A stretch of DNA of 64,000 bases. Origin: Gracilinanus agilis (taxonomy: Eukaryota). Numbering within the stretch: the stretch's first letter is position 1; each line of letters starts with the position of its first letter. Below the pieces are notes generated by a model. It saw only the letters and a list, made by a program, of their open reading frames with translations. It did not search any database and was not told where the DNA came from. Positions 20,936 through 50,031 of this stretch are shown one piece after another. The translations under genes were made by a program, and so were the position numbers. The stretch covers positions 227,811,352 through 227,875,351 of the forward strand of contig NC_058135.1 of the NCBI RefSeq assembly GCF_016433145.1, read 5' to 3'.

Positions 20936-22924
20936 GACCCAAGCCACTCCATTTCCTGACTCCAGGCCTTTTCTCTGGCTGGCCCCATGTCTGGAACTCT
21001 TTCCTTCCTTATCTCCACTTCCTGGCTTTCTCTGGCTCCCTCCAAGTCTCACTTTCTGCAAGAAGCCTCTGAAACCACCTACCACTTGTCCAGTCTAGCT
21101 GTTTACATGCTGTCTCCCCCATTAGACTGTGAGCTCCTCCAGAATAGGGACTGTTTTTTTCTTGGTGTTCTTCCTTTGTGTGCCAGCTCTTAGCTCAATG
21201 CCTTGCATATAGCAGGCATTTAATAAATGCTTGGTGAGTTGATTATAACTGGGTGGCAAATGCCAGAGTCGGTAATACCACAAGGGTGAGGGCTGCTGAC
21301 ATTTTGCTGCAAAGGGACCAGTCCCTGAGCAGGTCCAGTACCAAAGTAGCCACCGAAAAGCAATGGTCCAGTCTAGGAAGCAGCAGCAGAGAGCTGTGGT
21401 GGTGTCTGGTCTCTGCATCCAGAAACCCGACAGGATGTCTGCCTCAGATCTCCTTATTTTAGTCCCCAACATCTCCTGCAGCTCTACTTCAGGCAGCCAA
21501 AGGAGGCTGTTCCTCCACTGTGTTCATCCAGCCAAGCTTCTCATCCGCCTTCTGCTTGCCTCCATGAGGCCAGCCTGGCTTTATAATAAACATAGCTACA
21601 ACTCTAGTCCTGTGGATTTGTGGGCAATTTCTCCCAACAGGCTATAATTACAGTCTATGTGGCAAGGCCAAGGAAATCTTATTCAACAGGCTGGTCACTC
21701 TAAACATTCACTTTTCCAGATGATCTAGGATGGCACCAACTCACATCTGTTTAGTGGCTTATGGTTCATAGAACACTTTTTAACCCAAATAAGGTAGGAA
21801 GGACAGGTATTAGTTCCTTTATACAGCTGAGGAAACTGAAGTTCCTTGGAGAAGTTGTTAGAAGGCAGCCACTGAATTATGCAGAGAATCAGCCTCTACA
21901 CAGTAATCTAAAGTCTGTTATTTATCTCTTGTATTCCAATACAAGGCAAATCACTTAAATTCTTTGGGTCCATTTCTTTACCTGGGAAAGAAAGTTAGAC
22001 TAGATGACCTTTAAGGTCCACTCCCTATACCTAGAATGCCCCCTTCCCACATCACTGCTAGCCAAAATCTCATTCTCCTAAGAGTTACAGAAATGTATCT
22101 TCCTCCCTTCTTTGAAAAGATGGGATTCTGTGGGTGGGGAATACTACATGTCACTCATGCCTAATAATACTGAATGGCTTTGTTGAACTACTTTTTGGCT
22201 TTCTTTTTTATTCTCCACTACAAGAGATTGTTCTGTGGGTAGATAAGGCTGGGAGGATAGATTAAAAAATTTAAAAAAAATTTTTTAAGTATTAACAAAA
22301 GAATTTGTGTTTCTGTGTGTGCATTAAAGGAAAATAAATAAATGATCTCCTCCTGTCAAGGCCCCCACAAAGGTGCCACTTTATCCATCAAACCACCTTC
22401 TCAGATGAAAAATATTCTTTTTTTATGGCACAATCTGCTTTTTATATATCTATATATCTTATTTTTTCCCTTGAGTAGACTATGGGCTCCTTGATGTTCA
22501 AGGACAGATTTTATTTTTCTGTATTTTATTCTGTATTTACTGTATTTCCTCTCATTGTCTTATAAATAAGAAATACTTAATATTTCTTGAATTAAAAAGA
22601 ATTTTTCTCCAGGCCCCAAAAGTTCTAGAAAAATGACTAACCTTTGGGACACAGTATCCAAATCAGAGAGGAATTTATTAACCCCTAACTAGACCTTTAA
22701 AGTACAAGACAAGGTGTAAATGGAAAAATAACAGGGAGAATATCCTGAATATCACTGAGTAGAGCCAAAACTCAGGTTTTGGGTGCCGGCAGCAGCCCAG
22801 ATAGGCGCTCAGAGAATTAACCCAGCAACATACAATGCTGCATAAATGGATGCAAGCCCAGACACTCCATGGCAACCAAGCCTTGTGGCAGAAGCCACCC
22901 CTATTTAAAGATCAGGGAAACTAC

Positions 22925-24131
22925 CTGATGAGCAATCCATATGTGTCAGGCCTGGCTCCACATCGAGTTTCATTTTCTTAGTGTTGTGCTCCGAGGTAGA
23001 AGATGTGACTGGTGAGTCTGTGGTAGAAAAACAGGAAGGCTCAACAGGAGGGCTGTCATTTGGCGACTGCTCCATGAAATCCCCCTTTCTCTTGCGAGAA
23101 GTCACGGCAATGGAAGAGGGAACTGCCACCCCAGGAATCTGGGCTCTTCCAAGAAGGTTGCAGCCAGGAGCAGTGTGCTGTAACAGGAAATAGTCTATCC
23201 TGGCCTTCAGAGAAGCATGGGGCAGTGGCTGGGAGTGTTGGCTGAAGGCCACCCCTGTAAAGGGGTCACTGGGGACTCGGCCCCAAGCCGCTTCACTCCG
23301 GTTACATTTCTCCAAGGTGCTCTGGTCAATGACCTTGCCAGAGGGAAGCAGCATGGGGAAGGGCATGATCTCCAGAGTGATTGGATCCAGGAATTCCTCA
23401 GGCACATCCTGGATCACATCTGCCAGTTCCTGAAGCCCTGGTGGCTGCTGGCTCTGGGCATGGCCACAGGGCTCACAGTCACTCTCCATTGGCAATGCCG
23501 GGGTAGGGACAGAGGCCGTAGGATTAAAGCCTCGAGGAAGGCTCTGAGAGGCTACCAGCATGATGCTCTCTATGACCTCCTGGGGGCAGGTTTTGGCTGG
23601 TTGGCCCCACACTTCCACCTTCTTAATGCAAGTGACCCCACTGCCAGCGACATGGGTGATACAGATCTTTAAGTGGGATACATGACTAAGAGAGGAGGGG
23701 CCTTTACTCCAGAGCTCCTGAGTTACAGTTCCAGGAGAGGAGAGGGTAGCTTCCAACTGATGGAAAGGTGGCCTGGCCTTGAAGCCCCTGTGGCTGAACG
23801 TCACTCGACTCTGGTTTTTTAATAAGACTCTCCCTACCAAGGTGAAAGCCTCTTTGTCAGTGGTGGCCTGCTCCAAGAGTGAGGGCTGAAACTCCAGGCT
23901 GTTCCAAGAGGCTTTACCTGATGAGGCAGACGTGTACATTTCCAGGCCAGTGATATTTTGGACTCCCCCTGCTGTGAGGTCCACATTAATCTTGCCGATT
24001 TCCACATTAAAGGGAAAGGACACAGTCACGTGGACTGGTGGTTTAATGAAATACTCAGTGCGGAAGCCACGGCTTCTCTTCACGAGGTCTTCAGAGATGA
24101 GATTTTCTACTTCATAGCCATCTGCTGAGAT
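22925..24131 (-). CDS. UBOX5: UBOX5 exon 3 (1207 nt) containing the U-box domain (about 23175-23405)
   Basis: Acceptor tgtttgttgttaaatccag|ATC TCA GCA GAT (ISADGYEVENLISEDL...), in frame with ORF 22905..24083. U-box VPEEFLDPITLEIMPFPMLLPSGKVIDQSTLEKC...SDPFTG...LKARIDYFL. Donor TCAG|GTAGTT, phase 1. Confidence 0.96.
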
Positions 24132-25220
24132 CTGGATTTAACAACAAACAGGAAACATGCTGGTTTGAGCTGACCCAAGGCAGACAGGCTAGATTTTAAG
24201 AAATTACCATTTTAAAGAAAAACTGTTTTAAGAAAACCTATGTGGTTGTTGCTTAGAATTAATTCACAAGTCACGAAGCTTGGGTTCCCCCTTACTCAGG
24301 CAGGTAAGTCTGCAAAGGCAGAATTGCCATAAATAAGCAAGAGCATCTGTCTGGATTTAATAACATTTCTGAGCCTTAGCTCAGATAGGTACAAACTCTC
24401 ATAGTTCAAAGGGTACAAACTTCCAAATTATAAATAAATGTCACTGAAAGGTTACCCACAGGAGTTACCCCTTGTACAACTTCAAGGTACATAGCTTTGG
24501 GAAAACTGTCCTTCCTTGAACTTTCCCACATTTGTATTTGGGTCTTACCAACAATGACAATTCTCTTAGAAAGGCATCCTAGACACAGAATGAGAGAGGT
24601 GTGTCTACTAAGTGTCCATACTTGCCATCCTCAGTGTTCCTCTTCTGAATCCCTGACTGGGATTCACAATGAGCCACACTCGGGAGCCCAGACAGAGCTT
24701 AATTCTTAACCAGACAGAGCTTAATTCTTAATCGTAGGTGGGACTATGTGATCTACCAAGTACTTTACAAAGGTCTCATTTGAGCTTTATTGGAATGGAG
24801 TGTGGAGTTGAAAAGGAAATGGAATTTTTGTTTGACAGGCACTTCTTGCTGGTTAAGCCAAAGTCAGGACTAATAAAGGAGTCTCCAGACTAAGCATGAT
24901 TAGCAGAATTTCTACCTTAGTTATGCCTTTGAACCACATTTTAACTTACCATTTAAGAAGAGAAAATATGGAGGAATCTGATTAGGACTCCACAATAAAA
25001 TCAGTCCCATCTATCTTACAAATCAGTTTACTTTGACCAGTTCAACACAATTAGAGGATTGTTCTTTTAGACAAAGATCGTTTAATTGGTTTTGGAGGAA
25101 ATGGGGGAGTGGAAGTCAAGAAATATAAACTAGAAAAATTTACAATATATTTAAACTTGAACAGTGGATCTGCTCACTTGCCATAAGTTGGAAAGAACAA
25201 TCATTTAACTATTTTTTTAC

Positions 25221-25274
25221 CTTGTTGCAGTGAATTCTTGGTCTGAACTGTGGTAGGCAAAGGTTTATTACCAT
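25221..25274 (-). CDS. UBOX5: UBOX5/RNF37 first coding part (exon 2; whole exon 25221-25315 including 41 nt of 5' UTR)
   Basis: Minus strand reads ATG GTA ATA AAC CTT TGC CTA CCA CAG TTC AGA CCA AGA ATT CAC TGC AAC AAG = MVINLCLPQFRPRIHCNK, the known UBOX5 N-terminus. Donor AAG|GTAAAA (GT at 25220-25219), acceptor tttgtttttccttcaag| at 25316. Phase 0. Too short for the ORF track. Confidence 0.95.
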
Positions 25275-25597
25275 CTTTGCAGATGAAAGGGCAGCATCCA
25301 AGCATCAGAAGTAGCCTTGAAGGAAAAACAAAACCTGGGATTACTGAGGTGGTGTAACTTGATAATTAACTTTCTGAGTTTAACTTAACAGTTCATATGA
25401 AATCTCCAAGAACAGATCAACACAACCAAAACAGTCTCTTAATGCTTAAAGCCTCGGCTTCTTATAAATTACCACAAAGGAACTTTCCTAAGCTAGGCAG
25501 GCAACAGAGCATTGCAATTTTTTTTCCTCTCCCAAAGACTCTGTAATTTTCTCTAATTCTTTTCCCGACTCCCCTTCCACTTTCTTAACAACATTTT

Positions 25598-25804
25598 TTT
25601 ATTTTTTTATTATTTTTATTTTATTTTTAAACCCTTAACTTCTGTGTATTGGTTCATAGGTGGAAGAGAGGTAAGGGTGGGCAATGGGGGTCAAGTGACT
25701 TGCCCAGGGTCACACAGCTTGGAAGTGTCTGAGGCCGGATTTGAACCTAGGACCTCCCATCTCTAGGCCTGACTCTCAATCCACTGAGCTACCCAGCTGC
25801 CCCC
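25598..25804 (-). mobile_element. Young SINE1_Mdo-type SINE
   Basis: TSD CTTAACAACATTTT at 25584-97 and 25806-19. Confidence 0.92.
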
Positions 25805-25830
25805 TCTTAACAACATTTTAATAGACTGAT

Positions 25831-26003
25831 GGGACAACTAGGTAGTACAGTGAACAGAGCGCTAGGCCTAGAGTTGGGAGGATCTGGGTTCAAATCTGTC
25901 TTCAGACACTTCCTAGCTGTATATCCCTGGACAAGTCACTTAACCCCCAATTGCTTAGCCCTTATAGTATTGATTCTAAGACAGCAGGTAAGGGTTTTAA
26001 AAA
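25831..26003 (+). mobile_element. Older SINE1-type SINE, head-to-head with the previous copy
   Basis: gggacaactaggtag head, ggttcaaatct, aagggttttaaaa tail. Confidence 0.8.
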
Positions 26004-26480
26004 CAATACATTAAGACTGATATTGTACAGGCAAGGTAGGAAATTTCAAATATTCCCATTTTAAAACTCTTTGCAGTTGAGAAATGGATAAAGAAATCAT
26101 GGTACATGAAAGTACTGGAATAACTCCACATCCTAAAAAAAAGTTACAAATGATTCAGAGAAACATGAAAGGATTTTATGATTGATACATAGTGAAGTAA
26201 GAAAAATCAGAACTACACTAATGTTGATGGAAAGAATAATAATGAACAAGCATGGTCCCAGAGGAGAAGTACACAATTCTTCCTTTACTATAGAATTTGA
26301 GGACTATGGGTATGAAATATTGCAGATACTGTCAGATGTAATCAACAAATAGAGTGGTTTTGCTAAACTTTTATTTTTCCCTTTCAAGATAGGCTTATTG
26401 GGAAGGGAGAGGTTCATTCAAATATATCCATTCAGAAATGGATATATTTTTTAAAAAGGCATGGAAAAAAATCTCTAAGG

Positions 26481-26768
26481 CAGTGATAGTGAACCTATGG
26501 CACACAGCTCCCCTGCCCACTTGACCCCTTTCATTACCAGAAAGGCAGAGAGATTCAGGCAGAGCTGCTCTCCTCCCTTCTCCCTCATGCCTGATAACAT
26601 TTTTTCATTACGCCCTCTGCCCAGCAGCCCAAAGGGAGCACTTCCTCCCACCCCTGTGTGGGGTAAGTGGGGGTGGGGGAAAGACAGGGCATGCCCAACA
26701 CTTGAAGGGGAGAAGCACAGGGGTAGGGGGAGTGCATGACACTGTCTCTAAAAGGTTCCCTATCATTG
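26481..26768. mobile_element. Non-autonomous hAT-Charlie MITE (OC1-like), 288 bp
   Basis: Degenerate TIRs CAGTGATAGTGAACCT / AGGTTCCCTATCATTG and perfect 8-bp TSD CTCTAAGG (26473-80 and 26769-76). Confidence 0.85.
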
Positions 26769-28113
26769 CTCTAAGGGCTACCTAATTCCTTCACTGATCA
26801 GTCTGTAAGCATCAATCTTCAAAGAAACCTCCAAGTCAGACCAGTGGTCTATTCTACAAAGAAGCAAAAGTAGAGTGTGGATAGAGGGAAAGAGAGAGGA
26901 ACTATTTCTTTTCACACTTCTCTCTCTTCTGGACAGAATACAGGAATTCCCTAAGAGTTGTTATATCCCAGTTCTAGATAAAAGACAAGCCAAAAGGATG
27001 ACTCCCCTCCTCCCCCTATGGGCCTTTTTTTCTCTTTTCTTTTGTCCTTTTATTTTTCTCACAAGCAAGTTCTAAGAAATAGTACTGAAAGGGCAGCTAA
27101 ATGGCTCAGTGGATTGAAAGCCAGGCCAAGAGACAAGAGGTCTTTGATTCTAAGACAGAAGGCAAGGGTTTAAAAAAAAGAAGAAATTGCACTGAATTAA
27201 GCTTAGTAAATATTTTTGGCAGAAATGGTGTTTGCATAGGGAATCATCGGATTTACCTGTGGCTTGGAAGGAGGAAGAAAAGAATCCACCAACTCAGCAA
27301 TTGATTTTAGGAAAATGCTTCTTTCATACTGACTCAGCTGAAGTCTGGTCAAAAAGTACAATGGACTGATCCATTCAATTCATTCCAATTTAATAAACAT
27401 TTTTAAAGTCCCAACTTTGCTATGCTAGATACTGGTTATGCAAAAGTAAAATGAAAAACAGTCCAGTCTTCAAAGAACTTACATTGTTGGGAGAATTGAA
27501 CATCTACATATACAGTGCAAGTGGAGTACAAGATAACTTGAGAAAGAAGAGAGCATTAACAAGTAGGGAAACAACATCTTTAAGAGGTGACCCCTGAGTG
27601 GAGTCCAAAGCTATGGATTCTAAGAGGAGGGAGCCCATTCCATACATGTGAGACAGCATGTGCAAAGGGAAAGAGGTGGGAGATAGATGCCAAATCTGAG
27701 AAATAGCAAGTCAATTAGCTTGGCTGGAGCTACAGAGGGAGGATCTGGAAGGAAGGGATGTGAAATGAGTCTGAAAGCAGATTATGAAGGGTAGAGAAGT
27801 GGCAACAGGGAATCGCCAAGATTCTCTAATAGGACAGTGAAAGGTCAGACGTGCTTTAGGAAGATGATTTGTGTAGCTCTGTGAAGTGTGAATTGCAGAG
27901 AGACTAGGAGGGGGCCAATGAGGAGGCATTACTAAGCTAAGGTAGCATCAGTGTGAATTCTGCACAGGAGGTAGATGGAGAGGCTTCTGCATTTTAGAAA
28001 TACATTCAGAAAACAAAGCCAGAAACTCATATAATAATAGGGGGATAACAGATAAAAAGACTCAGCTGCAGAGCAGGCACACTTAGGACAGTGATAAGGC
28101 AAATAGCAATTGC

Positions 28114-28185
28114 CTCTTTTGTGTCATTTCTAGGGATAAAACCACATGTGTTTCCAATGTTGAACCATCTTACAGTGCCTAAGAC
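28114..28185 (-). pseudogene. Y-box protein (YBX1/2/3 family) cold-shock-domain fragment, probably mRNA-derived
   Basis: VLGTVRWFNIGNTCGFIPRNDTKE vs Y-box CSD [24 protein letters not shown], 18/24 identical. Homology stops after TKE. Paralog not assignable by eye. Confidence 0.8.
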
Positions 28186-28320
28186 TAGTGGGAAACCCAC
28201 CACCACCACCACCAGGAGTCTTCAGCAGCTGATAAGGAGGAAGTGTTAATTGTTAGGTCAGGTCCCCAAGGGATGACTGGGAGAGTTAAACTGGAAATCC
28301 AGATGCTGGTGGAGGAGTAG

Positions 28321-28462
28321 GAAGGCCAGCTCCCCAACAGTGTAGAAGGATGTTCTAAGCTGCCTCCTCTTCATGCTGCACAGCCCAAAGCAACAACTAT
28401 TTGTCACCTGAATGGCCAACTTTGACACACCTGCCTTTGGACCTGAACACAGACCACTTCTG
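28321..28462 (-). pseudogene. Decayed partial copy of the FASTKD5 RAP-domain coding sequence
   Basis: Aligns by eye to 47680-47856. Core 28398-28445 vs 47781-47828 matches at 44/48 nt. Translation GPKAGVSKLAIQVTNSCCFGLCSMKRRQLRTSFYTVGELAF vs parent GPQAGVSKLAIQVTNRNQYCFGTRHLLGLHNMKRRQLKRMGYTVVELAF, with internal deletions. Confidence 0.9.
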
Positions 28463-29679
28463 GACCCCCTATCCTGGGCATTTGCTCTACTGAAACAAAA
28501 AATTCTTCCCAATTTGGATCCAATTTCCCTCTCCATCTTTTTTCCCCTTCACTGTAATACACACCATTCCATTCAGGCATCCCTTGAACACATCATACTC
28601 AGTCTCACATCTGAAATTTTGCTCATGTCAAATCTGGAATGTTCTACCTACTGCTTCTCATCCCCTATCTCAGACCTATTTACCCCTCAAGGGCCAGCTC
28701 ATACACCACCTTAATTAACTGAATGCATATTTGTGCCCACTATCCTATTCCACACACTGTTAGGCCCTAGAAATGGAAAGACAAAAATGTAAAAATGTCT
28801 GTTGTCAAAGAGTTAATATTCTATGGTGGGGAGACATACATGTGGAAGCATGCAAAATAAATACAAGGAATTGTTGGAGGTATGGGGGAACAGGGTGGGA
28901 GGACGTTGCTCCTCTAGAACCAAGATGTATAAACTTCTGAGGCCTGAAAGATATCTGGGTAGTTCTGATCTATGATTGTTGAAAGGAAGCAAATCATAAA
29001 TCTTTCCCCTTTATTTCTCAGCTCCCTGAACTCCTTGCATCTCTGTAGAATTAATAACCAAACAGGGCATTAAAAGTGTACAAACACACTTCTTTTTGAC
29101 ACAACATCTTTTCCTCTCTACAGAGGCCCTAAGTTCTAAAATCTAGCTTCAAGTCTGCCAGCAATTCAAAGAAAAGGAATGTAGATAGCAAACTTGGCTC
29201 AAGCATGTTAAGTAAGAAGAAAGAAAAAAATATTCCCTTTCAAATAAGAGAAAAGCATTTAACCTCCAAGGAGGGGTGGGGGGTGAGCAATGGAAGCGTT
29301 AGCACATCATTTAGGTAAGTCAGCACTTTAGCTTTGAAAGAGCACAACTATTCTGGGCCCTTCCAAATGGTATTACTTATCCATCTTGGGAGAAAACTGG
29401 CCTTTTGTGAGCATTTTCATGGCAGCAAGTATAAGCAGAACTTATTCTAATTACCCAGTGGCTCCACCACAGAAAAGAGGGATCCTTAGGGGGATTGGCT
29501 GTCTTGGTTCCTAGGACTGAAATCAATGAAAACCCATTCCAAGGAAAAGTCCTTAGATGAAAAAGGACCTGTTTGCCTCAAACTTTTGGCTTTTGTCCTT
29601 CAAACCAATGACTAGTCTTTTACTTAATGACTTCCTGGAGTGATGAGGGATGAATAACTTAATTAGTGATTAGCTACAT

Positions 29680-29960
29680 CAAATCTAAAGGCAAACTAAT
29701 CAGAAACAAAAGGATTCTTCTCATTATCATTACAGAGACTTGGTGGAATGGAACAGGTGACTGGAATATGACCCTGGGAAAATATGCTTCATCCAAAATT
29801 AAAAGAAAGAATGGTGTTGTGTGGAGGGGAAACTTCAATTATCTAGTTACTGGGGATCATTCTTTGCCAAAAGCAGAAAAACTGAACAATTCCTGAGTAG
29901 TCCATTTCCTAATTTTTCCTTTAAAAGATGAAAAAAGCAACAAGGAAAACTAGCTATTAA
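29680..29960 (+). mobile_element. CR1/L3 LINE endonuclease fossil
   Basis: IIITETWWNGTGDWN and VVWRGNFNY resemble the CR1 ORF2 APE motifs GITETWW..HDWN and VVMGDFNY. Confidence 0.65.
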
Positions 29961-29999
29961 AGTAGAATCTGACATAGACCAAATTCTGAGAAGATATTT

Positions 30000-32760
30000 C
30001 AAAGCATGCAGAGAAAGAATAGTTAGGATTGAAACACTAGTAATGGGATAAATGCAAATTAAACCAAGCCTAAGAGGCTAATCTAGGCCATGTAAAAACA
30101 AAATACATGAATAAAAATCAATAAAAGAAAAGTTATTAGGTAATCTGACGTTAGGAAAAAAGGAATTCAGATCTAGCATCAGACACTTCTAGCTACTTGA
30201 CCTTGAGCAAGTCACTTAATCCCAATTGCCTAGTCCTTGCCACTCTTATGCTTTGGAACAGATAATTAGTATGGACCTTAAGACAGAGAGTAAGGATTTC
30301 TAAAAAAAGAAAAAGAAAAACCAAATTATCAGTATCAAACTAAAAATGGAGAAATCACAAATAAATAAAAAGAAAGGAAAATTATCAAACACTATTTTAC
30401 CCAATTATTTGCTCCACAAATTACGATGTAATCAAATGGATAACTATCTATCAAAATATAAAAACTTAGATTAGCAGAATAAGGAAGAACTTAAATGACC
30501 AAATTACAGAAAAAGCAAATGAATAAGCCAAAATTGAACTTGCAATGAAGAAAAAAATCTACCTCGGATCAAATAGATTTACATGTGAATTTTATCAAAT
30601 ACTCAAAGAATAACGAAGTCCAACATTATATAAATTATTCATAAAAATTAGGAAAAATAATCCCACCAAATTCCTTCTAGATATAAATATTTTCTGGGTA
30701 CTGAAATCAAGGAAAGGCAATACCAAGAAAGAAACCTATATATCAATAACCATAATTTAGAGAGGTTTTTAACTTTTTTGTGCCATGGACACTTTTGACA
30801 GTTTGGTAAAACCTATAAACTCCTTATTAAAATAAGTGTGGCCTATAGTTATAATTAAAGGAAATGCCAATTTTCAGTTAGGAGTGTGAAAATAAAAATG
30901 ATACACATTTTTTCCCATCTAAATGCTTTGATTCCAGGATAAATGAATATCAATACCAAAAAAAAAATATTTCTAAATCTTTACCTTCTGTCTTAAAATC
31001 AATACTGTGTATTGGTTCTAAGGCAGCAAAGCATCTGCAGCAGACATCCTAGCAAACACAGCCAGGAAGTATCTAAGGCCACATTTGAACCCAGGACCTC
31101 TTGTCTCTGGGCCTGGCTCTCAATCCATTGAGCCACCCAGCTGACCTCCAATGCAAAAATGTTTAATAAAATAATTAGCAAAAAAGCTACAGCAGGGGCA
31201 GTTGGGTGGCTCAAGAGATAAAGAACCAGGTCAGGAGTTGGGAGGATCTCGGGCAGACAATTCCTAGCTATGTGACCCCCCATGGGCAAGTCATTTAACC
31301 CCAATTGGCTCTTGCAACTCTTCTACCTTGAAACAGATACTCAGTATTGATTCTAAGACAGAATCTGATAAGAGTTTAAAAAAAGCTATAGCAAAATACC
31401 AAAACAACTGCACATTATGAACAAGTAGACTTTATAACAGGAACACAAGCCTGACTAGGTATTAGAAAACTAAAAACATGATAAACCAAATTAATAACAA
31501 CAATCAAAATCATGATTATATGGAGATGCAGAAAATGCTTCTGACAAAATATAACAATATTAGGCATTGGCTAAAAAAATATAAAAATTGGAATGGATTA
31601 GAAACACAACATACTAAAGCAAATAACATAATAATGTGGTGTTTGATAAACCCAAAGAACACAAATATTAGGTTAAGGACTCTACATGCAACAAAAACTG
31701 CTGGGAAAACTAGAATGCAATCTGGTAGGAATTAAGCAACACTAAGATTTCAAACTACTTATCTCAATAAGCTTCAAATGGATATACAACCTATATATAA
31801 AAGGTCATAACATAGACAAATTAGAAAAGGAAGAAAATATATTTTGCAACTATGGGTAGAGAAAGATTTTTTCCCAAACAAGAAATGGGGGGGGGGGTGT
31901 CACAGAACATAAAATAGACAATTTAGATTACTTAAAACATAAAATGTTTCATACAAACAAAATAAACATAGTTAAAATTAAAAGTGAAACAGTTAATTGT
32001 GAAAACCTTCAGAGCAAGTTTCTTTGGTAAAAGTGAAATATCCAAAATAAGAAAAAGAACTGATTCAAACATAAGAATGGCAACCATTACTCCAATAGAT
32101 AAATGGTCAAAGAATATAGGCAAGTAGTTGTCAAAGGAAGTAATGAAATGAACAGAGAAATGAAAGTGACAATAACTCTGAAATTTTACCTCAAAGCTAT
32201 TAGAATGTCAAAGATGACAAAAATGAAAAATGCCTGTCGATGGAGAGGCTTGAAGAGGTCAGGAGAACTGTTGGTAGAGTTGTGAATTGGTCCAACTATC
32301 TTAAAAAGCAATTTGGAGGGGCAGCTGGGTAGCTCAGTGGATTGAGAGCCAAGCCTAGAGACGGGAGGTCCTAGGTTCAAATCCGGCCTCAGACACTTCC
32401 CAGCTGTGTGACCCTGGGCAAGTCACTTGACCCCCATTGCCTACCCTTACCACTCTTCCACCTATAAGTCAATACACAGAAGTTAAGGGTTTAAAATAAA
32501 ATTAAAAAAAAAAAAAAAGCAATTTGGAACTATGTCCCCCAAAATCACCAATCTATGCATATCCTCTGATCCACTGAAATCACCCAAAATGATCAAAGAA
32601 AGAAAAAGATTCAAAAGTATCAAACTATTAGTAGCAGTCCCTTTAGTTCTTGCAAAGAACTAGAAACAAAAGAGGTACCCACCAAATGGGGAATGGCTGG
32701 ACAAATTATGGGATAGAAAATTAATGGAGTATTAATTTGCCATGAGAAATGATGGAACTG
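30000..32760 (+). mobile_element. Old fragmented L1 ORF2/3' region with nested SINEs (30150-30320 +, 30985-31150 -, 31195-31385 +, 32318-32513 +) and a hAT fragment
   Basis: A-rich decayed ORF2 blocks (gatgcagaaaatgcttctgacaaaat, ACRWRGLKRSG, ggggaatggctggacaaattatgg). The SINE at 32318 has TSD AAAAAGCAATTTGGA. Confidence 0.75.
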
Positions 32761-33101
32761 GGGTTGTTAGGTGGCTCAATGGATTAAGAGCCAGAGCTAG
32801 AGATAGGAGGTTCTGGGTTCAAATTTGACCTCAAACACTTTCTACTTGTGTAATCCTGGGCAAATCCATTTTAAAAAATTATTTGTTACAAAGATTATGA
32901 TTTTCTTCCTTTTTAAAAAAATTGTATTGATGGCTCTCCATTGCCAATAAGATAAGGTCCAGACTGCTTAGTTTATCATTTAAGGCCCTTAACAATTTGG
33001 CTTCTATATTACCTTTCTAGTCTTATTTTCCTTCCTCTCCATTTCAGAAAAAGTGGGCTCCTGGTTCTCTCAAAACATCCTCTCCCTCCCACCTGAAATG
33101 A

Positions 33102-33560: not shown

Positions 33561-36344
33561 TTTGGAGAAATATATATTAGTATATTAAGAAGATCTTTCT
33601 TTATTATAATAAATGCTGTATTTGGGGAATTCGACCATGATGTTTTAGGGCAGGATTTGAAGTCTATATTTTAAAGTACTATAGTATGGAGCACAGTTGA
33701 AAACAGTGTTTGAGATGTAGATAAATACTTCAATCAATGAATGAATGCTAGAGATATGTCTGTATCTAGAAATGACTTCTCAAAACTCTACTGCCCTTCT
33801 GCACCATCTCTGCATCTTCCCTGTGAAGTAACTCAAGGAGGAAAAAGATGAGATCGAAAATGAATGTTAGAACCTATCAAATCCAACATGTATCTTCACA
33901 TCTACTTTCTTACACACTTAAGTGGTCTACCAGCCCCTAAAACAATACATTCCATTTCTGAAGAGCTTTTAATTGTCCAGAAGTTTTTTACATAAAATCT
34001 AAATCTGGTTTTCCATAACTTTACCCATTTTTCCTGTCCCAGAAGACAAACATAGTAAAGTCTAATTAATTCCTCTCTCCCCTAACAGCTCTTCATATAT
34101 TTGAAGCACAATATCATTTGACTACTAAATCTTTCCTTTAGGATAAACTTCTTCAGCTCCTTTAACCAGTCCTTTATGGCACACTCTCCAGTTCTGACAT
34201 TCTTGTGAAGCTTCATTTTGTCTGTTCCTTTCTTAAAAACTGAACATAAGTTCTCCAGATACAGCCTTGCTGGAACACAGTGGATAAAATGATGGTCTTA
34301 GAGTCAAGAAAACTTAAGTCTCAACACTAAATCTGGGAGACCCTGTTAAGTAACTTTAAGCTCTTTTTGCTTTAACTTCCTCATCTGTAAAATAAGGGAG
34401 ATTATAGATCACAGTACTGAGAATAAGGTCTGATTTGCATCTTAAGAAAATTATTTTGGCTGCTGGAAAGACTGTCAGTACAATTAGGTGGCTATTTCAA
34501 AATGGAGGGTAAAGAAGAAAGAATGATGAAAAGATATTATGGAAGTCATGAAAGACTTTGAATTGATATGGGATGTGAAATGGAAAAGTCTTGGTCAAAA
34601 TTCAAAAGCCTGAGTGACTGGGAAACTCTCAATTTCTATTGAAACAGGTCATTTTGGAGGCAGGGGTAGAGAATGAGTAAAGAGCTTGAAAAACCTTCAA
34701 ATGTTAATGATGACATTAATAGAAGCAACTACATAGGTGACTTTGGGAAAATCAAATTCCCTCTGCATTAATGTGAAATAAGGTGGATTAAGACCTTTCC
34801 TAGATCTAAAGTTCTAAGATTCCTTGGGCTTAATAATTACTGGGCTTTTCTCATTTTTATGAATTGTAGTGGTTCCAGTGCTACCTTGAGAAGGGTGGCT
34901 AAATCTGAGACTAGAATAGATCATGAGGACAATGCTGATGCCAGAAGGCAGAGAAACCCCCAGGCAAGAAAGGTGCCCACCCCACCCCCACCTTCTCTTC
35001 TGTTCTCTAGCTCCTTCTTCTTGTTAATACAAGCAGTCGTGCTATTTTAGCAGCAGGGGTAGACAGAGTGAATACATAGATAAACCCAGAATTTTCGTTT
35101 ATACAGTATTGGAGAACCAACAGTAGGAAGAGATAGGTAGGTGTCCACTATTCCAGAAGCCTCCCACTAACTCGCACCACTCTTTCTTCACCTGAATGCG
35201 CGTACAAATCAGATGCCTCAAATTCTTCCCTTGGAATTAGAAATAGGCCTTAACAAGTGATTCATTTACTGTTCAAGCACAGGAGAGCCACCAAGGGGCT
35301 GTTTACAAATCACCTAAGTTTAACAAGAGTAATACCTAATGCTTGGAGATGCTAATTTTCTTTTGCTTTGTTTTTAGATTAACAAGCATTTATTTTCTCT
35401 CCTTTCAACCTCTCCCTTCCACATCATTCCTATATTAGTAGCAAACTTCTACCAGCTATATCCTACTGAATTCAGTCTTCAAGGCTCTGCCAGCGCACAC
35501 TGTTATGGCCACATTCTTTGGGACTATAAAATCCTGAATGGCTAGCTGCTCTCTGATGGATAGAGCCAAAAGGCTCTAATGCATTTATCTCCCAATTCTA
35601 CAACCTAAGTATCTTCCAAAAGGGATCAAAAGGGTTCACAGAAAGGGGCAACCAGGTGGTTCACTGGACAGAGTCAGGCCTGGAAAGGGGAGGTCCTGGG
35701 TCAAAGCTGACATCAGATACTTTCTAGCTGTGTGATGGACAAGTCATTTAATCTCCATTGCCTTGCCTTTATCACCCTTCTGCCTTGGAACCAATACACA
35801 GTATTCATTATAAGACAGAAAGTAAAAGTTAAAAAGAAAAGAGTTACAGGAACAATGAGTCTCTCTTCAAAAGATAAAGCCTAATGTTGGATCAGTGAGG
35901 GCACTGATTTCACTATGATTATTATTTGCCTCTGTATTTACCCATTCTATAATTTACACATAAACTTACTATTTCCTTTCTTTGCTATACCACAATGATT
36001 TGGGGAATAAAAACAAATACTATTTTGTATCAATAAAATCCCTTCCACACCCCTAACATCTCTGTAACCATCTATCCAGGTAGCCCTAGTGCCTGGATCA
36101 CAGAGAGCTCAAAGGCTGGCATAGCTCATCTCTCCCATTTCTCAGAAATTTTGATTGAGGCAGCAAATAAGGCCTTATTAGTGAGGTGGCTCAAGCCACG
36201 AGGGCAGACCATGTCTGGAGGGGCAGACTGAGTAGATCTGCCTCTCTTGTGTTTTCTGGGACAAGAAAAGAAATAGAGGGGCCAAACTTGGCCCAGAAAG
36301 TACCTGCTCAAATCAGGGGAAGGAGCACAGAATAATGTTCTTTT

Positions 36345-36543
36345 TTTTTTTTTTTTTTTACATTTTTAAACCCTTAACTTCTGTGTATTGGCTCCTAGGT
36401 GGAACAGTGGTAAGGGTGGGCAATGGGGGTCAAGTGACTTGCTCAGGGTCACACAGCTGGGAAGTGTCTGAGGTCAAATTTGAACCTAGGACCTCCTGTC
36501 TCTAGGCCTGGCTCTCAATCCACTGAGCTACCCAGCTGCCCCC
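36345..36543 (-). mobile_element. Young SINE1_Mdo-type SINE
   Basis: Long poly(T), TSD AATGTTCTTTT at 36334-44 and 36544-54. Confidence 0.9.
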
Positions 36544-37269: not shown

Positions 37270-37934
37270 TGTTGTGATTGGACACGCAAACTAGGAGGGA
37301 GGCACAGGAAGTGACGCATATAAGTGACCCCTTTAAAAAGAGAGTTGAGTGAGTCAGGAGGTCTTTTGGAGAAGAAGGTCTTCTGCTAGAAACTAGGAAG
37401 GAGGCACAGGAAGTGACGCATATAAATGACCCCTTTAAAAAGAGAGAGTTGAGAGAGTCAGGAGGTCTTCTGGAGAAGAAGGATTCTGGAGAAGGAGGTC
37501 TTCGACTAGAGAAGGAGCTCTTCTGGTTCGTGGAGGAGAGCTGGCTGGGACTCTGAAACCTTGGCAAGACTGTTCTTAAAATCTTCCTTTGGAATTCCAC
37601 GTGGTGAGTTTAAAGACTGAATCTTCCTGAACTTCTCTTAAAGAAATTCCCTTTAATAGAGACTCTGTGACCGAAGCTTTTGCTTCATTCACCTCTGGGC
37701 CTCTGGCCCTCTGACTCTCAGCTTGGTTTAATTAGATCTCCCTGGATTAACTAGGGGATTGTAGCAATTTAACTACTGTGTTAGATTCTTATTTCCTTAT
37801 TTCTTCTACCTCTTCTGAATTGTAAATAAATTTACATAAAAGTCAATTTTGACTTGAGGTTATTCCTTAATTAGGGAATTTGGCGACCAAATCTTTAATA
37901 TATTTGACCCCAAACCCCTTTTTTCCCCATTACA
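37270..37934 (+). mobile_element. Solo LTR (ERV1-like), family B, with an internal tandem duplication of about 102 bp
   Basis: TG...CA termini, perfect TSD CCTA (37266-69 and 37935-38), AATAAA at 37825-30, duplicated unit starting at 37288 and 37390. Confidence 0.88.
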
Positions 37935-47595: not shown

Positions 47596-50031
47596 TCATA
47601 AGCCAGAATTGAATACTTTCTCATGGAGATAGGAAAGCTTTTCTGAACGTGTCCGTCTGAATAAAGGAAACCATTCCCAGAAGGCCAGCTCCACCACAGT
47701 GTAGCCCATCCTTTTTAGCTGCCTTCTCTTCATGTTATGCAGCCCCAGCAGGTGCCTGGTACCAAAGCAATACTGGTTCCTATTTGTTACCTGAATGGCC
47801 AACTTTGATACTCCTGCCTGTGGACCTGTTAAGGAACACAAGCTGGCCACTTCTGAGGTTCCAACACTGGGCAAACAGCCAGCTAAAGGCAGTAGCTTCT
47901 TCTCTACCGCTCCTGGTTTCTCATTGGCCTCTGCCTTAGCCTGATGATGTCTGTTTGATTTTCCCTTTAACAGCCGAGTCATCAAATCATCTGTAAGACT
48001 AACTCCCATATGTTTCAGGTGAGTGTCAGTCATATCGGTCAGTATGACTTCTTGGTTAAAAGGGAGTGGTTTATTATTGACATCAAGATGAACTTCTAAA
48101 TCAGATGATCGTGTATGAGGCAAAATCATATGATGTTTGATATACTGAGGACCACCTAAAATAATCTGAAGTAAAGAGAAAGCTTCTAGGAATTCTGGTT
48201 TGGAGGTCATATCTTGTCTTGCTAAATTCCAGAGAAGTCCTGCCCCCTCTTGCCGTAGCTCAGCATTAAGACGATTGCCTCTGTAATCTGGGCACTCAAT
48301 CCCCACAGCACCATCAAGCGTGAACAATTCTTTGGTGAGCTCAAACTTACTTCTCTCCTGAGCTAGCCTGACAAATTCTGGACTTAAGGCAAAATTAAGA
48401 AGATCTAGTGGAAAGCGTTCAGCAAATGCCAAGCCTAGCAAACTGGTGAACAAGTGGTCAGGGAACTTTCTGAACTCGGGCATCTTTCTGTGAATCTCAA
48501 CTATCAGACTAGAATAAAATTCTTCTACATTAGGTGGCTCATAATTCAAAGTTCCAAAAGACCACAAAATTTTGGCCACATCTTTGCTCCGACAATATGC
48601 CATCCTGGGAGGCAATGAAGCAGCTACAGCATTCAGGAATCTTTCATCCAGAAAGCGTAAAGCTGAGCAGGCTAGAGTTAAGTGCATGACACCCTGGACC
48701 CCCATAGAAGGGATACGCTGAGGGGCAATCTGTCCAAACTGCTTCATGAAATCTAGGTGATCAACATGAGTAAATCGAAACATTTTAAGTATATTCACTA
48801 GGGCATAGTTGCTCAAATGTTCCATCTGAGCACAAACTTTATCCCCAATTTTGCGCATGACATACTCAGAAAGGCTGCTACTCGATTTGAAGAATCCTAA
48901 ACAGACTGTGCCAGCCTCTTCTAAACTAAGTGAATCCAAATACTTGAGAACCAAAGATTCTAGTTTCTGCATTAAATCCTGGGGCACTTGCCGACCTTCA
49001 CCAATAATATAAATTAAGTGTACCAGCTGGGACAAGGACAGATCTTTCCAATGCAAGTTAAGGTAACTGTAAAATATCTTTAAAAAGCATGGTACATTGT
49101 AGCCTAAGCACCGCCACAGGTCAGCCACCAATAAAAGCTCATTTAGGTTCATATCCCATACCCGACGACAAAATTCTCCTTCATATTTAGCTAGTATTGG
49201 GTGGGAATAAGGAATCCTCAATCGAACAAATGCTTTCAAAATACCTATTAGGTCCAAAGTATCAAAGAGTTTTATGTTATTCAGGCTTAAACGGCACAGT
49301 ATTGTAAACTTGATATTGGACAAGAGTGCAGAATGCTGCTCCAAGGGCAAAGAGCTCAATTTGCCAAAATAGTCAGTGATGGTTTGGGGCTGAAGATTAC
49401 TTCGCAATACTGTCACTTTGTGCAAAATCAGTTCACCCTCTTTAATGGACAGGACCTGCCCAGCCTCAGATGTATTATAACTGTGATGCTGGTACTCAGG
49501 TCTGAGCTTGAGGAAAACTCTAGGGTCTTCGAAGGAGTCAAAAGTTTCTACACCAACTTCTTGATCATCATCTTTCATAACCTCCAGGCTGCCAGGATGT
49601 ACCACACTAGGCTGAGGAACCGAAGGCTCACTGGTCTCCAAATCCAAGAAAGCATTTTTGATCGTTGGCATTATTCGAGAAGAAGGGACACAATAAGTAT
49701 TCTGGATTTGTTTTTCAGTAATGTTGGTACTGTCCTTTTCTGGAGGATCTTGTTCACCATGTCTTGTGCTGCTATCTCTGTTCCTATAGGCCACTCTTTT
49801 AGTACCAGTATAAGCGAAAGGATTGTACAATACTTGGTAACCTGGAGGAGTCAAGAGTTTTAGAGTGGCAGAAGCTTTGGGTTTAACGTTGATCTCTTCA
49901 GGGTTCTGAACACAATCCTGTGGGGTCTGAGTGGGCCATTTGTCCCTGGTTTGGTTCTCAGCTGTGGTTGAGAATGTAGATATCCTGCAGATCTTGCTTG
50001 GAAATCTTCGGCATATTATCACAGTAGCCAT
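47596..50031 (-). CDS. FASTKD5: FAST kinase domain-containing protein 5 (mitochondrial RNA-processing factor), single coding exon, 811 aa
   Basis: Uninterrupted ORF. First ATG at 50031 (gatccATGG); the ORF track start at 50040 is a TTG. Recognisable FASTKD5 motifs include LRPEY..HSYN, YLNLHWKDLSLSQLVHLIY, CRSKDVAKILWSFGTLNY, HHMILPHTRSSDLEV and a C-terminal RAP domain (about 47614-47804, KLAIQVTNRNQYC...KRRQL...YTVVELAFWEW). Acceptor ctacccttttttcag| at 50069, exon starts at 50068. Confidence 0.97.
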   Translation of the reverse strand: MATVIICRRFPSKICRISTFSTTAENQTRDKWPTQTPQDCVQNPEEINVKPKASATLKLLTPPGYQVLYNPFAYTGTKRVAYRNRDSSTRHGEQDPPEKDSTNITEKQIQNTYCVPSSRIMPTIKNAFLDLETSEPSVPQPSVVHPGSLEVMKDDDQEVGVETFDSFEDPRVFLKLRPEYQHHSYNTSEAGQVLSIKEGELILHKVTVLRSNLQPQTITDYFGKLSSLPLEQHSALLSNIKFTILCRLSLNNIKLFDTLDLIGILKAFVRLRIPYSHPILAKYEGEFCRRVWDMNLNELLLVADLWRCLGYNVPCFLKIFYSYLNLHWKDLSLSQLVHLIYIIGEGRQVPQDLMQKLESLVLKYLDSLSLEEAGTVCLGFFKSSSSLSEYVMRKIGDKVCAQMEHLSNYALVNILKMFRFTHVDHLDFMKQFGQIAPQRIPSMGVQGVMHLTLACSALRFLDERFLNAVAASLPPRMAYCRSKDVAKILWSFGTLNYEPPNVEEFYSSLIVEIHRKMPEFRKFPDHLFTSLLGLAFAERFPLDLLNFALSPEFVRLAQERSKFELTKELFTLDGAVGIECPDYRGNRLNAELRQEGAGLLWNLARQDMTSKPEFLEAFSLLQIILGGPQYIKHHMILPHTRSSDLEVHLDVNNKPLPFNQEVILTDMTDTHLKHMGVSLTDDLMTRLLKGKSNRHHQAKAEANEKPGAVEKKLLPLAGCLPSVGTSEVASLCSLTGPQAGVSKLAIQVTNRNQYCFGTRHLLGLHNMKRRQLKRMGYTVVELAFWEWFPLFRRTRSEKLSYLHEKVFNSGL

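What the first reader, a model, noticed from the sequence alone, without database searches (positions are those of the whole stretch)
28114..28462. Chimeric patch joining FASTKD5 RAP sequence to a YBX cold-shock-domain fragment
Fragments of two unrelated RNA-binding genes lie on the same strand about 135 bp apart in UBOX5 intron 1, in the order RAP (28462-28321), GGT-rich linker, CSD (28185-28114). One is copied from a gene 19 kb away in the same intron and the other from a gene normally elsewhere in the genome. Independent chance insertion this close is unlikely. It suggests a single event such as L1 RT template switching or RNA-templated break repair that captured a local transcript and an abundant mRNA. 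No TSD, poly(A) or intact reading frame was seen, so it is probably non-functional.
Basis: partly seen in the sequence, partly recalled or inferred. Interest (0 to 1): 0.75.

Follow-up and report, generated by a model that had tools for sequence, protein, structure and literature searches.

The report
Old FASTKD5 plus Y-box fragment patch
A 370-base stretch in an opossum UBOX5 intron holds dead scraps of two unrelated genes side by side, a real but non-functional relic most likely left by a single DNA-break repair tens of millions of years ago.

Summary
The window is the Gracilinanus agilis UBOX5/FASTKD5 locus, with all genes on the minus strand.

- **FASTKD5 piece:** 28321-28480(-) is a decayed copy of FASTKD5 codons ~724-787 from 19 kb upstream. 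132 of 160 aligned bases are identical, 34 bases are deleted, and the blastn E-value is 9e-17.
- **Y-box piece:** 28111-28186(-) encodes VLGTVRWFNIGNTCGFIPRNDTKE, which matches the Y-box cold-shock domain at 18 of 24 residues (PDB YB-1, E 2e-8).
- **Spacer:** 134 bases of unknown origin, including a (GGT)6 run, separate the two pieces.

The patch is not a misassembly and not a multi-copy repeat. One contig of a relative about 10% diverged spans both pieces in the same order. A second relative has at least the FASTKD5 piece plus the spacer.

The FASTKD5 copy is marsupial-type and about three times older than that species split. The two pieces have decayed equally. No test shows positively that one event made both pieces.

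No target-site duplication, poly(A) tail, LTR or RNA-family match is present. Both pieces are internal gene fragments, which fits a break-repair patch better than classic L1 template switching. The patch evolves at the neutral rate, carries stop codons, and appears in no annotated protein isoform.

This is a new example of a known kind and of modest interest.

The parts
28321..28480 (-). Decayed copy of FASTKD5 codons ~724-787. It covers the 25 residues before the RAP domain plus the first two thirds of that domain.
   Evidence: blastn and blastx against the parent. The nucleotide alignment gives 132/160 identical with 34 nt deleted in at least 4 gaps. The piece carries marsupial-specific FASTKD5 residues. 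Pfam RAP does not detect it.
28187..28320 (-). Spacer of unknown origin between the two pieces. It contains a perfect (GGT)6 run at 28197-28214.
   Evidence: No match elsewhere in the window. TRF finds the microsatellite. The spacer is single-copy, and it is present in relatives B (from 28215 up) and C.
28111..28186 (-). Fragment of a Y-box protein cold-shock domain, corresponding to YB-1 residues about 60-83.
   Evidence: PDB YB-1/YBX2 chains at E 2e-8 to 3e-7. Pfam CSD at E 0.0039. Six to eight other Y-box-like contigs per genome align to 28135-28183 or 28111-28170.
47680..47873 (-). Parental segment inside the intact FASTKD5 coding exon.
   Evidence: The ORF 47596-50040 carries the FAST_1, FAST_2 and RAP domains and is 93% identical over its C-terminus to Monodelphis FASTKD5.
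25215..25274 (-). First coding exon of UBOX5 (context). It places the patch in the upstream non-coding intron.
   Evidence: tblastn of G. agilis RNF37 (P0001) against the window.

Best explanation
One ancient germline repair event made the whole patch. A break in the UBOX5 intron was closed by stitching in short copied pieces. The first was 160-195 nt templated from the FASTKD5 coding region 19 kb upstream on the same transcription unit, either from the nascent transcript or from the DNA itself. Next came a stretch of unknown source. Last was about 75 nt of cDNA from an abundant Y-box mRNA.

This is a composite 'templated sequence insertion' of the class that lacks a target-site duplication and poly(A) tail. 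It happened after marsupials split from placentals and well before G. agilis split from the two relatives sampled. It has drifted neutrally since then.

Shown here:
- the identity and limits of the two pieces;
- their shared strand;
- single-copy status of the composite;
- orthology in relatives;
- equal decay of the two pieces;
- neutrality.

Inferred, not shown:
- that one event made both pieces;
- that a break was the cause;
- that RNA was the template.
For: (1) Local origin. The FASTKD5 piece sits 19 kb from its intact parent on the same strand. A free cDNA would land that close with probability about 1e-5, so the copy was made in cis.

(2) Piece sizes. Both pieces are internal fragments of 160 and about 75 nt, 370 nt in all. 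Experimental break-repair patches measure 73-414 bp and lack target-site duplications and poly(A) (PMC5110952).

(3) No target-site duplication, poly(A), LTR-like flanks or small-RNA part was found.

(4) Chance adjacency. A recognisable gene fragment would lie within 200 bp of a given site with probability about 1e-3 to 1e-2 (the fragment numbers are assumed).

(5) Equal decay. Amino-acid replacements are 6/24 against 12/46, Fisher p = 1. The best 49-nt cores show 5 against 4 mismatches.

(6) Shared orthology. One contig of organism C covers 27851-28706 with only about 19 window bases missing, so both pieces and the spacer were already together before that split.

(7) Y-box retrocopies exist in these genomes. 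The consensus of seven organism-C contigs (0.77 agreement) reads ...EKKVLVTK|VLGTV upstream of 28186, which is mRNA-like.
Against: - No empty site was found, so the insertion limits and junction micro-features are unknown.
- At this age, target-site duplications and A-tails would have eroded, so their absence says little.
- The 134-nt spacer could simply be original intron lying between two separate insertions.
- The age comparison rests on 24 and 46 codons and could not detect even a two-fold difference.
- Whether the Y-box piece crosses an exon junction (RNA origin) could not be tested with sequence in hand.
Confidence: 0.45

Rival explanations
1. Two unrelated events produced the patch. One was a small local DNA duplication of the FASTKD5 3' coding end. 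The other was a Y-box processed pseudogene, whole or partial, that landed about 135 bp away. Each was then eroded by deletions, and the spacer is original intron.
For: The pieces are not directly fused (134-nt spacer). All four or more gaps in the FASTKD5 piece are deletions, so erosion is active here. Y-box copies are moderately common, at about 6-8 per genome at 80% identity or better. Across a scan of very many windows, some chance adjacencies are expected (my estimate).
Against: Chance adjacency on the same strand within 200 bp has probability about 1e-3 to 1e-2 per site. Decay of the two pieces is indistinguishable. Both were already together in the ancestor shared with organism C. No further Y-box or FASTKD5 remnant lies nearby.
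Confidence: 0.33
2. A classic L1-driven chimeric retrocopy. Reverse transcriptase started on a Y-box mRNA at a nicked target, jumped to a FASTKD5/UBOX5 transcript and finished. A later deletion removed the Y-box 3' part and the A-tail.
For: Both parts are sense-oriented in the order expected for this model, with the second template lying 5'. The Y-box piece starts within about 12 nt of where exon 2 begins in human YBX1, whose exon 1 encodes 55 aa (PMC4130533). That position could reflect a jump at the 5' end of an exon-2-initiated transcript. Earlier scan notes record other chimeric retrocopies in this genome (unchecked).
Against: There is no poly(A), no target-site duplication and no direct fusion. 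Only about 75 nt of a roughly 1.5-kb mRNA remains, and it is the wrong end for a 3'-anchored copy. The model needs an extra, precisely placed deletion. A trans-acting cDNA would not be expected to carry a gene that lies 19 kb away.
Confidence: 0.12
3. The patch is a functional element, such as an alternative exon or a small ORF using RNA-binding domain remnants.
For: An ATG-initiated 92-codon ORF (28258-28536, minus strand) spans the FASTKD5 piece and lies in sense orientation within the host transcript.
Against: Stop codons separate the two pieces in every frame. Pfam RAP does not detect the FASTKD5 piece, and Pfam CSD is below its cutoff. The ORF has no relative among 5.8 billion proteins. 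No annotated G. agilis or Monodelphis RNF37 isoform contains patch peptides. Substitutions between species run at about 10% in the FASTKD5 piece, spacer and flank alike.
Confidence: 0.03
4. The patch is an assembly artefact, or part of a multi-copy repeat consensus.
For: None found.
Against: A Logan contig from run X1 covers 27301-29100 with no differences, although that run may be the source sample. Orthologous contigs from other species span the junctions. Only the Y-box core (28135-28183) and the FASTKD5 core (28397-28445) attract other contigs. Those are Y-box copies and the single FASTKD5 parent.
Confidence: 0.01

Closest known systems
Class 2 templated sequence insertions: break-repair patches of reverse-transcribed RNA (Onozawa et al.; review PMC5110952)
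   Same: Short pieces (73-414 bp in experiments) are copied from transcribed sequence elsewhere. They lack target-site duplications and poly(A), and the donor stays intact.
   Different: This case has two, possibly three, donors in one patch, and one donor is local rather than distant. It is tens of millions of years old, so junction microhomology and the empty site cannot be seen. An RNA origin is not shown.
Chimeric retrocopies made by L1 reverse-transcriptase template switching (U6-L1 and mRNA-mRNA chimeras; PMC4476161, PMC2104539, bioRxiv 10.1101/2025.02.02.635956; titles and abstracts only were seen)
   Same: Copies of two different transcripts lie in the same orientation at one site.
   Different: Those chimeras are directly fused, end in poly(A) and carry target-site duplications. 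None of these features is seen here, and both parts here are internal fragments.
Replicative template switching (FoSTeS/MMBIR) complex insertions (from my own knowledge)
   Same: Short segments are copied from templates tens of kb away in cis, and several templates can contribute to one event.
   Different: A Y-box template would have to lie nearby as DNA. No other Y-box copy is in the 64-kb window.
Ordinary Y-box processed pseudogenes
   Same: The CSD piece resembles Y-box mRNA-derived copies, of which several exist per didelphid genome.
   Different: Only about 75 nt survives. There is no 3' end, and the piece adjoins a copy of a neighbouring gene.

Membership tests
L1 template-switch chimeric retrocopy | Two parts from different RNAs, in the same orientation and directly fused | tested here: not met
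   The orientation is shared, but 134 nt of unassigned sequence lies between the parts.
L1 template-switch chimeric retrocopy | The 3' part ends in a poly(A) tail | tested here: not met
   No A-rich tract lies downstream of 28111. Age could have erased one.
L1 template-switch chimeric retrocopy | Flanking target-site duplication | tested here: not met
   Only short repeats at chance level were found. Age could have erased one.
Class 2 templated sequence insertion (break-repair patch) | An insert of tens to hundreds of bp copied from elsewhere, with the donor left intact | tested here: met
   The pieces are 160 nt and about 75 nt. The FASTKD5 donor ORF is intact with all its domains.
Class 2 templated sequence insertion (break-repair patch) | No target-site duplication, poly(A) signal or tail | tested here: met
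   This is weak evidence at this age.
Class 2 templated sequence insertion (break-repair patch) | End-joining junctions (microhomology, filler) seen against an empty site | not testable with these tools
   No empty-site orthologue could be fetched. Chromosome-scale marsupial assemblies return no DNA. The single read-laying run gave only relatives that already carry the patch.
Class 2 templated sequence insertion (break-repair patch) | RNA-derived, with spliced exons in the insert | tested here: inconclusive
   The FASTKD5 coding region is one exon, so it gives no signal. For YBX1, papers place [10 protein letters not shown] in exon 2, give exon 1 as 55 aa, and place part of the CSD in exon 3. 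The exon 2/3 boundary, which I recall as falling after ...GFI, was not verified, so whether the piece crosses it is unproven.
Functional RAP-domain or cold-shock-domain protein | A complete domain in an open frame that passes the Pfam threshold | tested here: not met
   Pfam RAP gives no hit. Pfam CSD scores 17.5 bits against a cutoff of 27, covering profile positions 2-25 of 66. Stop codons flank the piece.

The most novel reading that the evidence does not exclude
The patch is a germline-fixed fossil of multi-template, RNA-templated break repair in a mammal. On this reading the break was bridged first by the locus's own nascent FASTKD5/UBOX5 transcript and then by an abundant Y-box mRNA. That would be natural evidence for the nascent-RNA-templated repair so far shown mainly in cell-culture reporters (PMC12065846, PMC10011834; abstracts only).
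Probability: 0.2. Interest if true: 0.6.

Novelty: new member of a known kind. Interest (0 to 1): 0.3.

Why it matters
If one event made the patch, it is a dated natural example of a break repaired with copies from more than one template, one of them the broken gene's own neighbourhood. The dating bracket is after the marsupial-placental split and before a split among didelphid opossums. Cases like this help estimate how often repair of this kind reshuffles gene fragments in germlines. On its own the patch has no detectable function and does not alter UBOX5 or FASTKD5 coding sequence.

Tried and rejected
- **Orthologous introns through UBOX5 proteins.** For Monodelphis the tool returns no DNA because the file is too large, and the gene range covers the coding region only. 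The Dromiciops protein is not on record.
- **Relatives' contigs through the 92-aa ORF over the FASTKD5 piece.** No protein relatives were found.
- **More FASTKD5 remnants.** tblastn of the whole protein against the window found only the known piece. A weak hit at 9727-9897 is chance.
- **More Y-box remnants.** Three-frame reading of 27400-28200 shows nothing convincing past ...NDTKE. By eye there is a possible ragged continuation to about 28075 (GTATTTG, ACTG-CC-TAAG). I had no tool-derived Y-box cDNA to score it against, so I do not claim it.
- **Flanking repeats.** No target-site duplication or inverted repeats. No LTR-like direct repeats within 18 kb, only scattered SINE copies. The flanks and the spacer have no other copy in the window.
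- **Small-RNA partners.** No Rfam or tRNA match in or near the patch.
- **Expression.** No RNA run holds the stretch, so exonisation is untested.
- **Earlier scan notes.** Searches by sequence and for YBX came back blank.
- **YBX exon limits in the literature.** Recovered only in part.
- A full-length Y-box protein or cDNA was therefore never in hand.
- **Restrictions.** The window holds no N.

Full report
**Locus**

The window comes from the agile gracile opossum, Gracilinanus agilis. The large open exon at 22905-24083(-) carries the DUF5918 and U-box domains. It is 99% identical to G. agilis RING finger protein 37 (UBOX5).

UBOX5 coding exons lie at 25274-25215, 24134-22917, 17406-17236 and 13484-13278 on the minus strand. 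The 814-codon ORF at 47596-50040(-) is FASTKD5, with FAST_1, FAST_2 and RAP domains. Its C-terminus is 93% identical to Monodelphis FASTKD5.

The patch at 28.1-28.5 kb lies between FASTKD5 and the first coding exon of UBOX5, on the same strand as both. I did not locate the non-coding first exon. That the two genes share a 5' exon in other mammals is from my own knowledge.

**The FASTKD5 piece**

- blastn of 27900-28700 against the window gives one significant hit besides itself. It pairs 28321-28445 with 47680-47828 at 71% identity over 149 columns, E 9e-17.
- blastx gives 34 of 56 columns against FASTKD5 residues 732-787, E 9e-13.
- A gentler alignment extends the homology to 28480. It pairs 160 fragment bases with 194 parental bases (47680-47873). 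Of the aligned bases, 132 are identical, and 34 parental bases are missing in at least four gaps.
- The homology stops abruptly at ...GAGCTGGCCTTC (28321). This is 27 codons before the FASTKD5 stop.
- The piece is therefore an internal fragment. It covers about 25 residues before the RAP domain and the first two thirds of that domain (Pfam places RAP at residues 749-808).
- No other part of FASTKD5 is detectable anywhere else in the window.

**The Y-box piece**

- The minus-strand frame reads VLGTVRWFNIGNTCGFIPRNDTKE at 28185-28114.
- A 41-residue query around it hits eight solved Y-box protein chains (YB-1, YBX2, zebrafish YB-1) at E 2e-8 to 3e-7. It aligns to [25 protein letters not shown], with 18 of 24 residues identical.
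- Bacterial cold-shock proteins score only E > 0.3, so the source is a vertebrate Y-box gene.
- Pfam CSD matches profile positions 2-25 of 66 at E 0.0039, below the family cutoff.
- Correcting the PDB E-value for a six-frame scan of the whole window leaves about 7e-5 (my arithmetic).
- Nothing recognisable follows ...TKE in any frame. A possible ragged continuation seen by eye is not claimed.

**Spacer and junctions**

The 134 nt between the pieces (28187-28320) match nothing else in the window. They contain a perfect (GGT)6 run.

I found none of the following:
- a target-site duplication, terminal inverted repeat or A-tail;
- LTR-like direct repeats within 18 kb, where only dispersed SINE copies appear;
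- an Rfam or tRNA match.

**Not an artefact, not a repeat, and shared with relatives**

One run holds 95% of the sampled words of 26001-31000 and is probably the source animal. Runs of two coded organisms, B and C, hold 5-6%, as expected for about 9-10% divergence.

Contigs of four runs were laid on 27301-29100 at 80% likeness or better:

- **Organism A (X1).** One contig covers the whole stretch without a difference.
- **Organism C (X6).** One 914-nt contig lies colinearly on 27851-28706, with 83 mismatches and 81 gap letters. Its span is 899 nt against 856 in the window. That implies about 62 inserted and only about 19 missing window bases. Both pieces and the spacer are therefore present.
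- **Organism B (X2).** One contig lies on 28215-29067, covering the FASTKD5 piece plus the spacer. The contig ends about where the Y-box piece begins, so that piece is unknown in B.
- **Organism D (X11, more distant).** Its only orthologous contig aligns at 28480-28539 and 28909-29051. It stops exactly at the 5' edge of the FASTKD5 piece. A further 225 nt of that contig match nothing in the stretch. This could be an empty site or plain divergence, and I could not resolve it.

Extra contigs pile up at only two places inside the patch:

- **28397-28445.** Exactly one more contig per genome aligns here. This is the FASTKD5 parent, with 4 mismatches in 49.
- **28135-28183 and 28111-28170.** About 6-8 contigs per genome align here. 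In organism C their upstream consensus reads ...EKKVLVTK|VLGTV. These are Y-box genes and retrocopies.

The composite itself is single-copy.

**Age**

The fragment carries residues found only in marsupial FASTKD5 (GPxAGVSKLAIQVT and YTVxELAF). Placentals have LQAPxVKLAIQLT and YRVVELxH at the same positions. The copy therefore postdates the marsupial-placental split.

Two residues place the copy before the Gracilinanus-Monodelphis split:

- It has R where both didelphid parents (Gracilinanus and Monodelphis) have K and all Australasian marsupials have R.
- It has S where the G. agilis parent has N and Monodelphis has S.

This is weak evidence, because each is a single-base change.

I polarised the A-versus-B/C differences inside the piece using the parent as outgroup. 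Five or six are changes on the G. agilis line and nine or ten are on the B line.

| Comparison | Jukes-Cantor distance K |
|---|---|
| FASTKD5 piece vs parent | 0.20-0.26 |
| A-C and A-B orthologous patch (contig-wide mismatch totals) | 0.11 |

I allowed a slower clock on the coding parent. My assumption was about 0.4 of the neutral rate. On that basis the copy is roughly three times older than that split. Absolute dates would rest on remembered divergence times, so I give none.

The Y-box piece has no parent sequence in hand. The comparable measures are:

| Measure | Y-box piece | FASTKD5 piece |
|---|---|---|
| Codons with replaced amino acid | 6 of 24 | 12 of 46 (Fisher p = 1) |
| Mismatches in best 49-nt core | 5 | 4 |

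The ages are compatible, but the test is weak.

**Function**

- Stop codons interrupt every frame between the pieces.
- The RAP remnant fails Pfam, and the CSD remnant is below the cutoff.
- The 92-codon ATG ORF over the FASTKD5 piece has no relatives.
- No annotated RNF37 isoform of G. agilis or Monodelphis contains patch peptides.
- Differences between A and B run at 10.6% in the FASTKD5 piece, about 14% in the spacer and about 8% in the adjoining flank. The contig-wide figure is 10%. This is neutral drift.
- No RNA run was available.

**Mechanism**

A FASTKD5 copy lies 19 kb from its parent on the same strand. That argues strongly for copying in cis. A free cDNA would land there with probability near 1e-5 (inference). 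This counts against any purely trans retroposition of that piece.

Both pieces are internal fragments without 3' ends, which standard target-primed reverse transcription does not produce without later deletion. Their sizes fall within the 73-414 bp range of experimental break-repair patches. Those patches lack target-site duplications and poly(A) and derive mostly from transcribed sequence (PMC5110952).

I estimate the chance of a recognisable gene fragment lying within 200 bp of a given site at 1e-3 to 1e-2 (the fragment numbers are assumed). Earlier scan notes list other chimeric retrocopies in this genome (unchecked). Composite events therefore do not seem rarer than chance adjacency.

I favour one composite repair event (0.45) over two separate events (0.33) and over an L1 template-switch chimera that later lost its 3' end (0.12).

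**The Y-box piece and exon limits**

Papers give the following for YBX1:

- Exon 1 of human YBX1 encodes the 55-residue N-terminal domain, and [10 protein letters not shown] lies in exon 2 (PMC4130533).
- Mouse exon 3 encodes part of the cold-shock domain, and its removal shifts the frame (PMC13441540).

The piece therefore begins within about 12 nt of the start of exon 2. From memory, exon 2 is 64 nt long and ends just after ...GFI. If so, the piece would cross the exon 2/3 junction and be RNA-derived. I could not verify this, and it is the first item to check.

- Orthologous DNA from named marsupial assemblies could not be fetched.
- The single read-laying run showed only part of its difference tables.
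- Organisms B, C and D are coded. I take B and C for other didelphids by inference only.

Noticed in passing
window 28336-28352: Five substitutions within 17 nt (28336, 28347, 28348, 28349, 28352) separate G. agilis from both relatives, and four of them move away from the FASTKD5 parent state. This is a clustered multi-base mutation on the G. agilis line, and it accounts for the odd 'RTSFY' stretch in the fragment.
   Followed up: partly
window 28480 (organism D contig): The only orthologous contig of the most distant run (X11) stops aligning exactly at the 5' edge of the FASTKD5 piece. A further 225 nt of the contig match nothing in 27301-28479 at 80% likeness or better. This is either a possible empty site or mere divergence.
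   Followed up: no
window 28258-28536 (-): An ATG-initiated 92-codon ORF spans the FASTKD5 piece. It has no relatives in the protein collection and no Pfam hit.
   Followed up: yes
window 28197-28214: A perfect (CCA)6/(GGT)6 microsatellite sits just upstream of the Y-box piece. Its purity contrasts with the age of the surrounding patch.
   Followed up: no
window 37288-37482: Two adjoining direct-repeat pairs, 57 nt and 44 nt long, recur about 102-104 nt downstream at 96% and 93% identity. Together they indicate a young local tandem duplication of a roughly 100-nt unit (families D6 and D7).
   Followed up: no
window 25588-25949, 27086-27153, 30191-30232, 31056-31146, 31270-31311, 32314-32443, 32756-32878, 36327-36543: Many copies of the common tRNA-like marsupial SINE (GGGCAGCTAGGTGGCTCAGTGG...) are scattered through the intron. 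None is arranged as a flank of the patch.
   Followed up: partly
window 9727-9897 (-): A weak tblastn match to FASTKD5 residues 245-304 (30% identity, E 0.011) has no Pfam support and looks like chance.
   Followed up: yes
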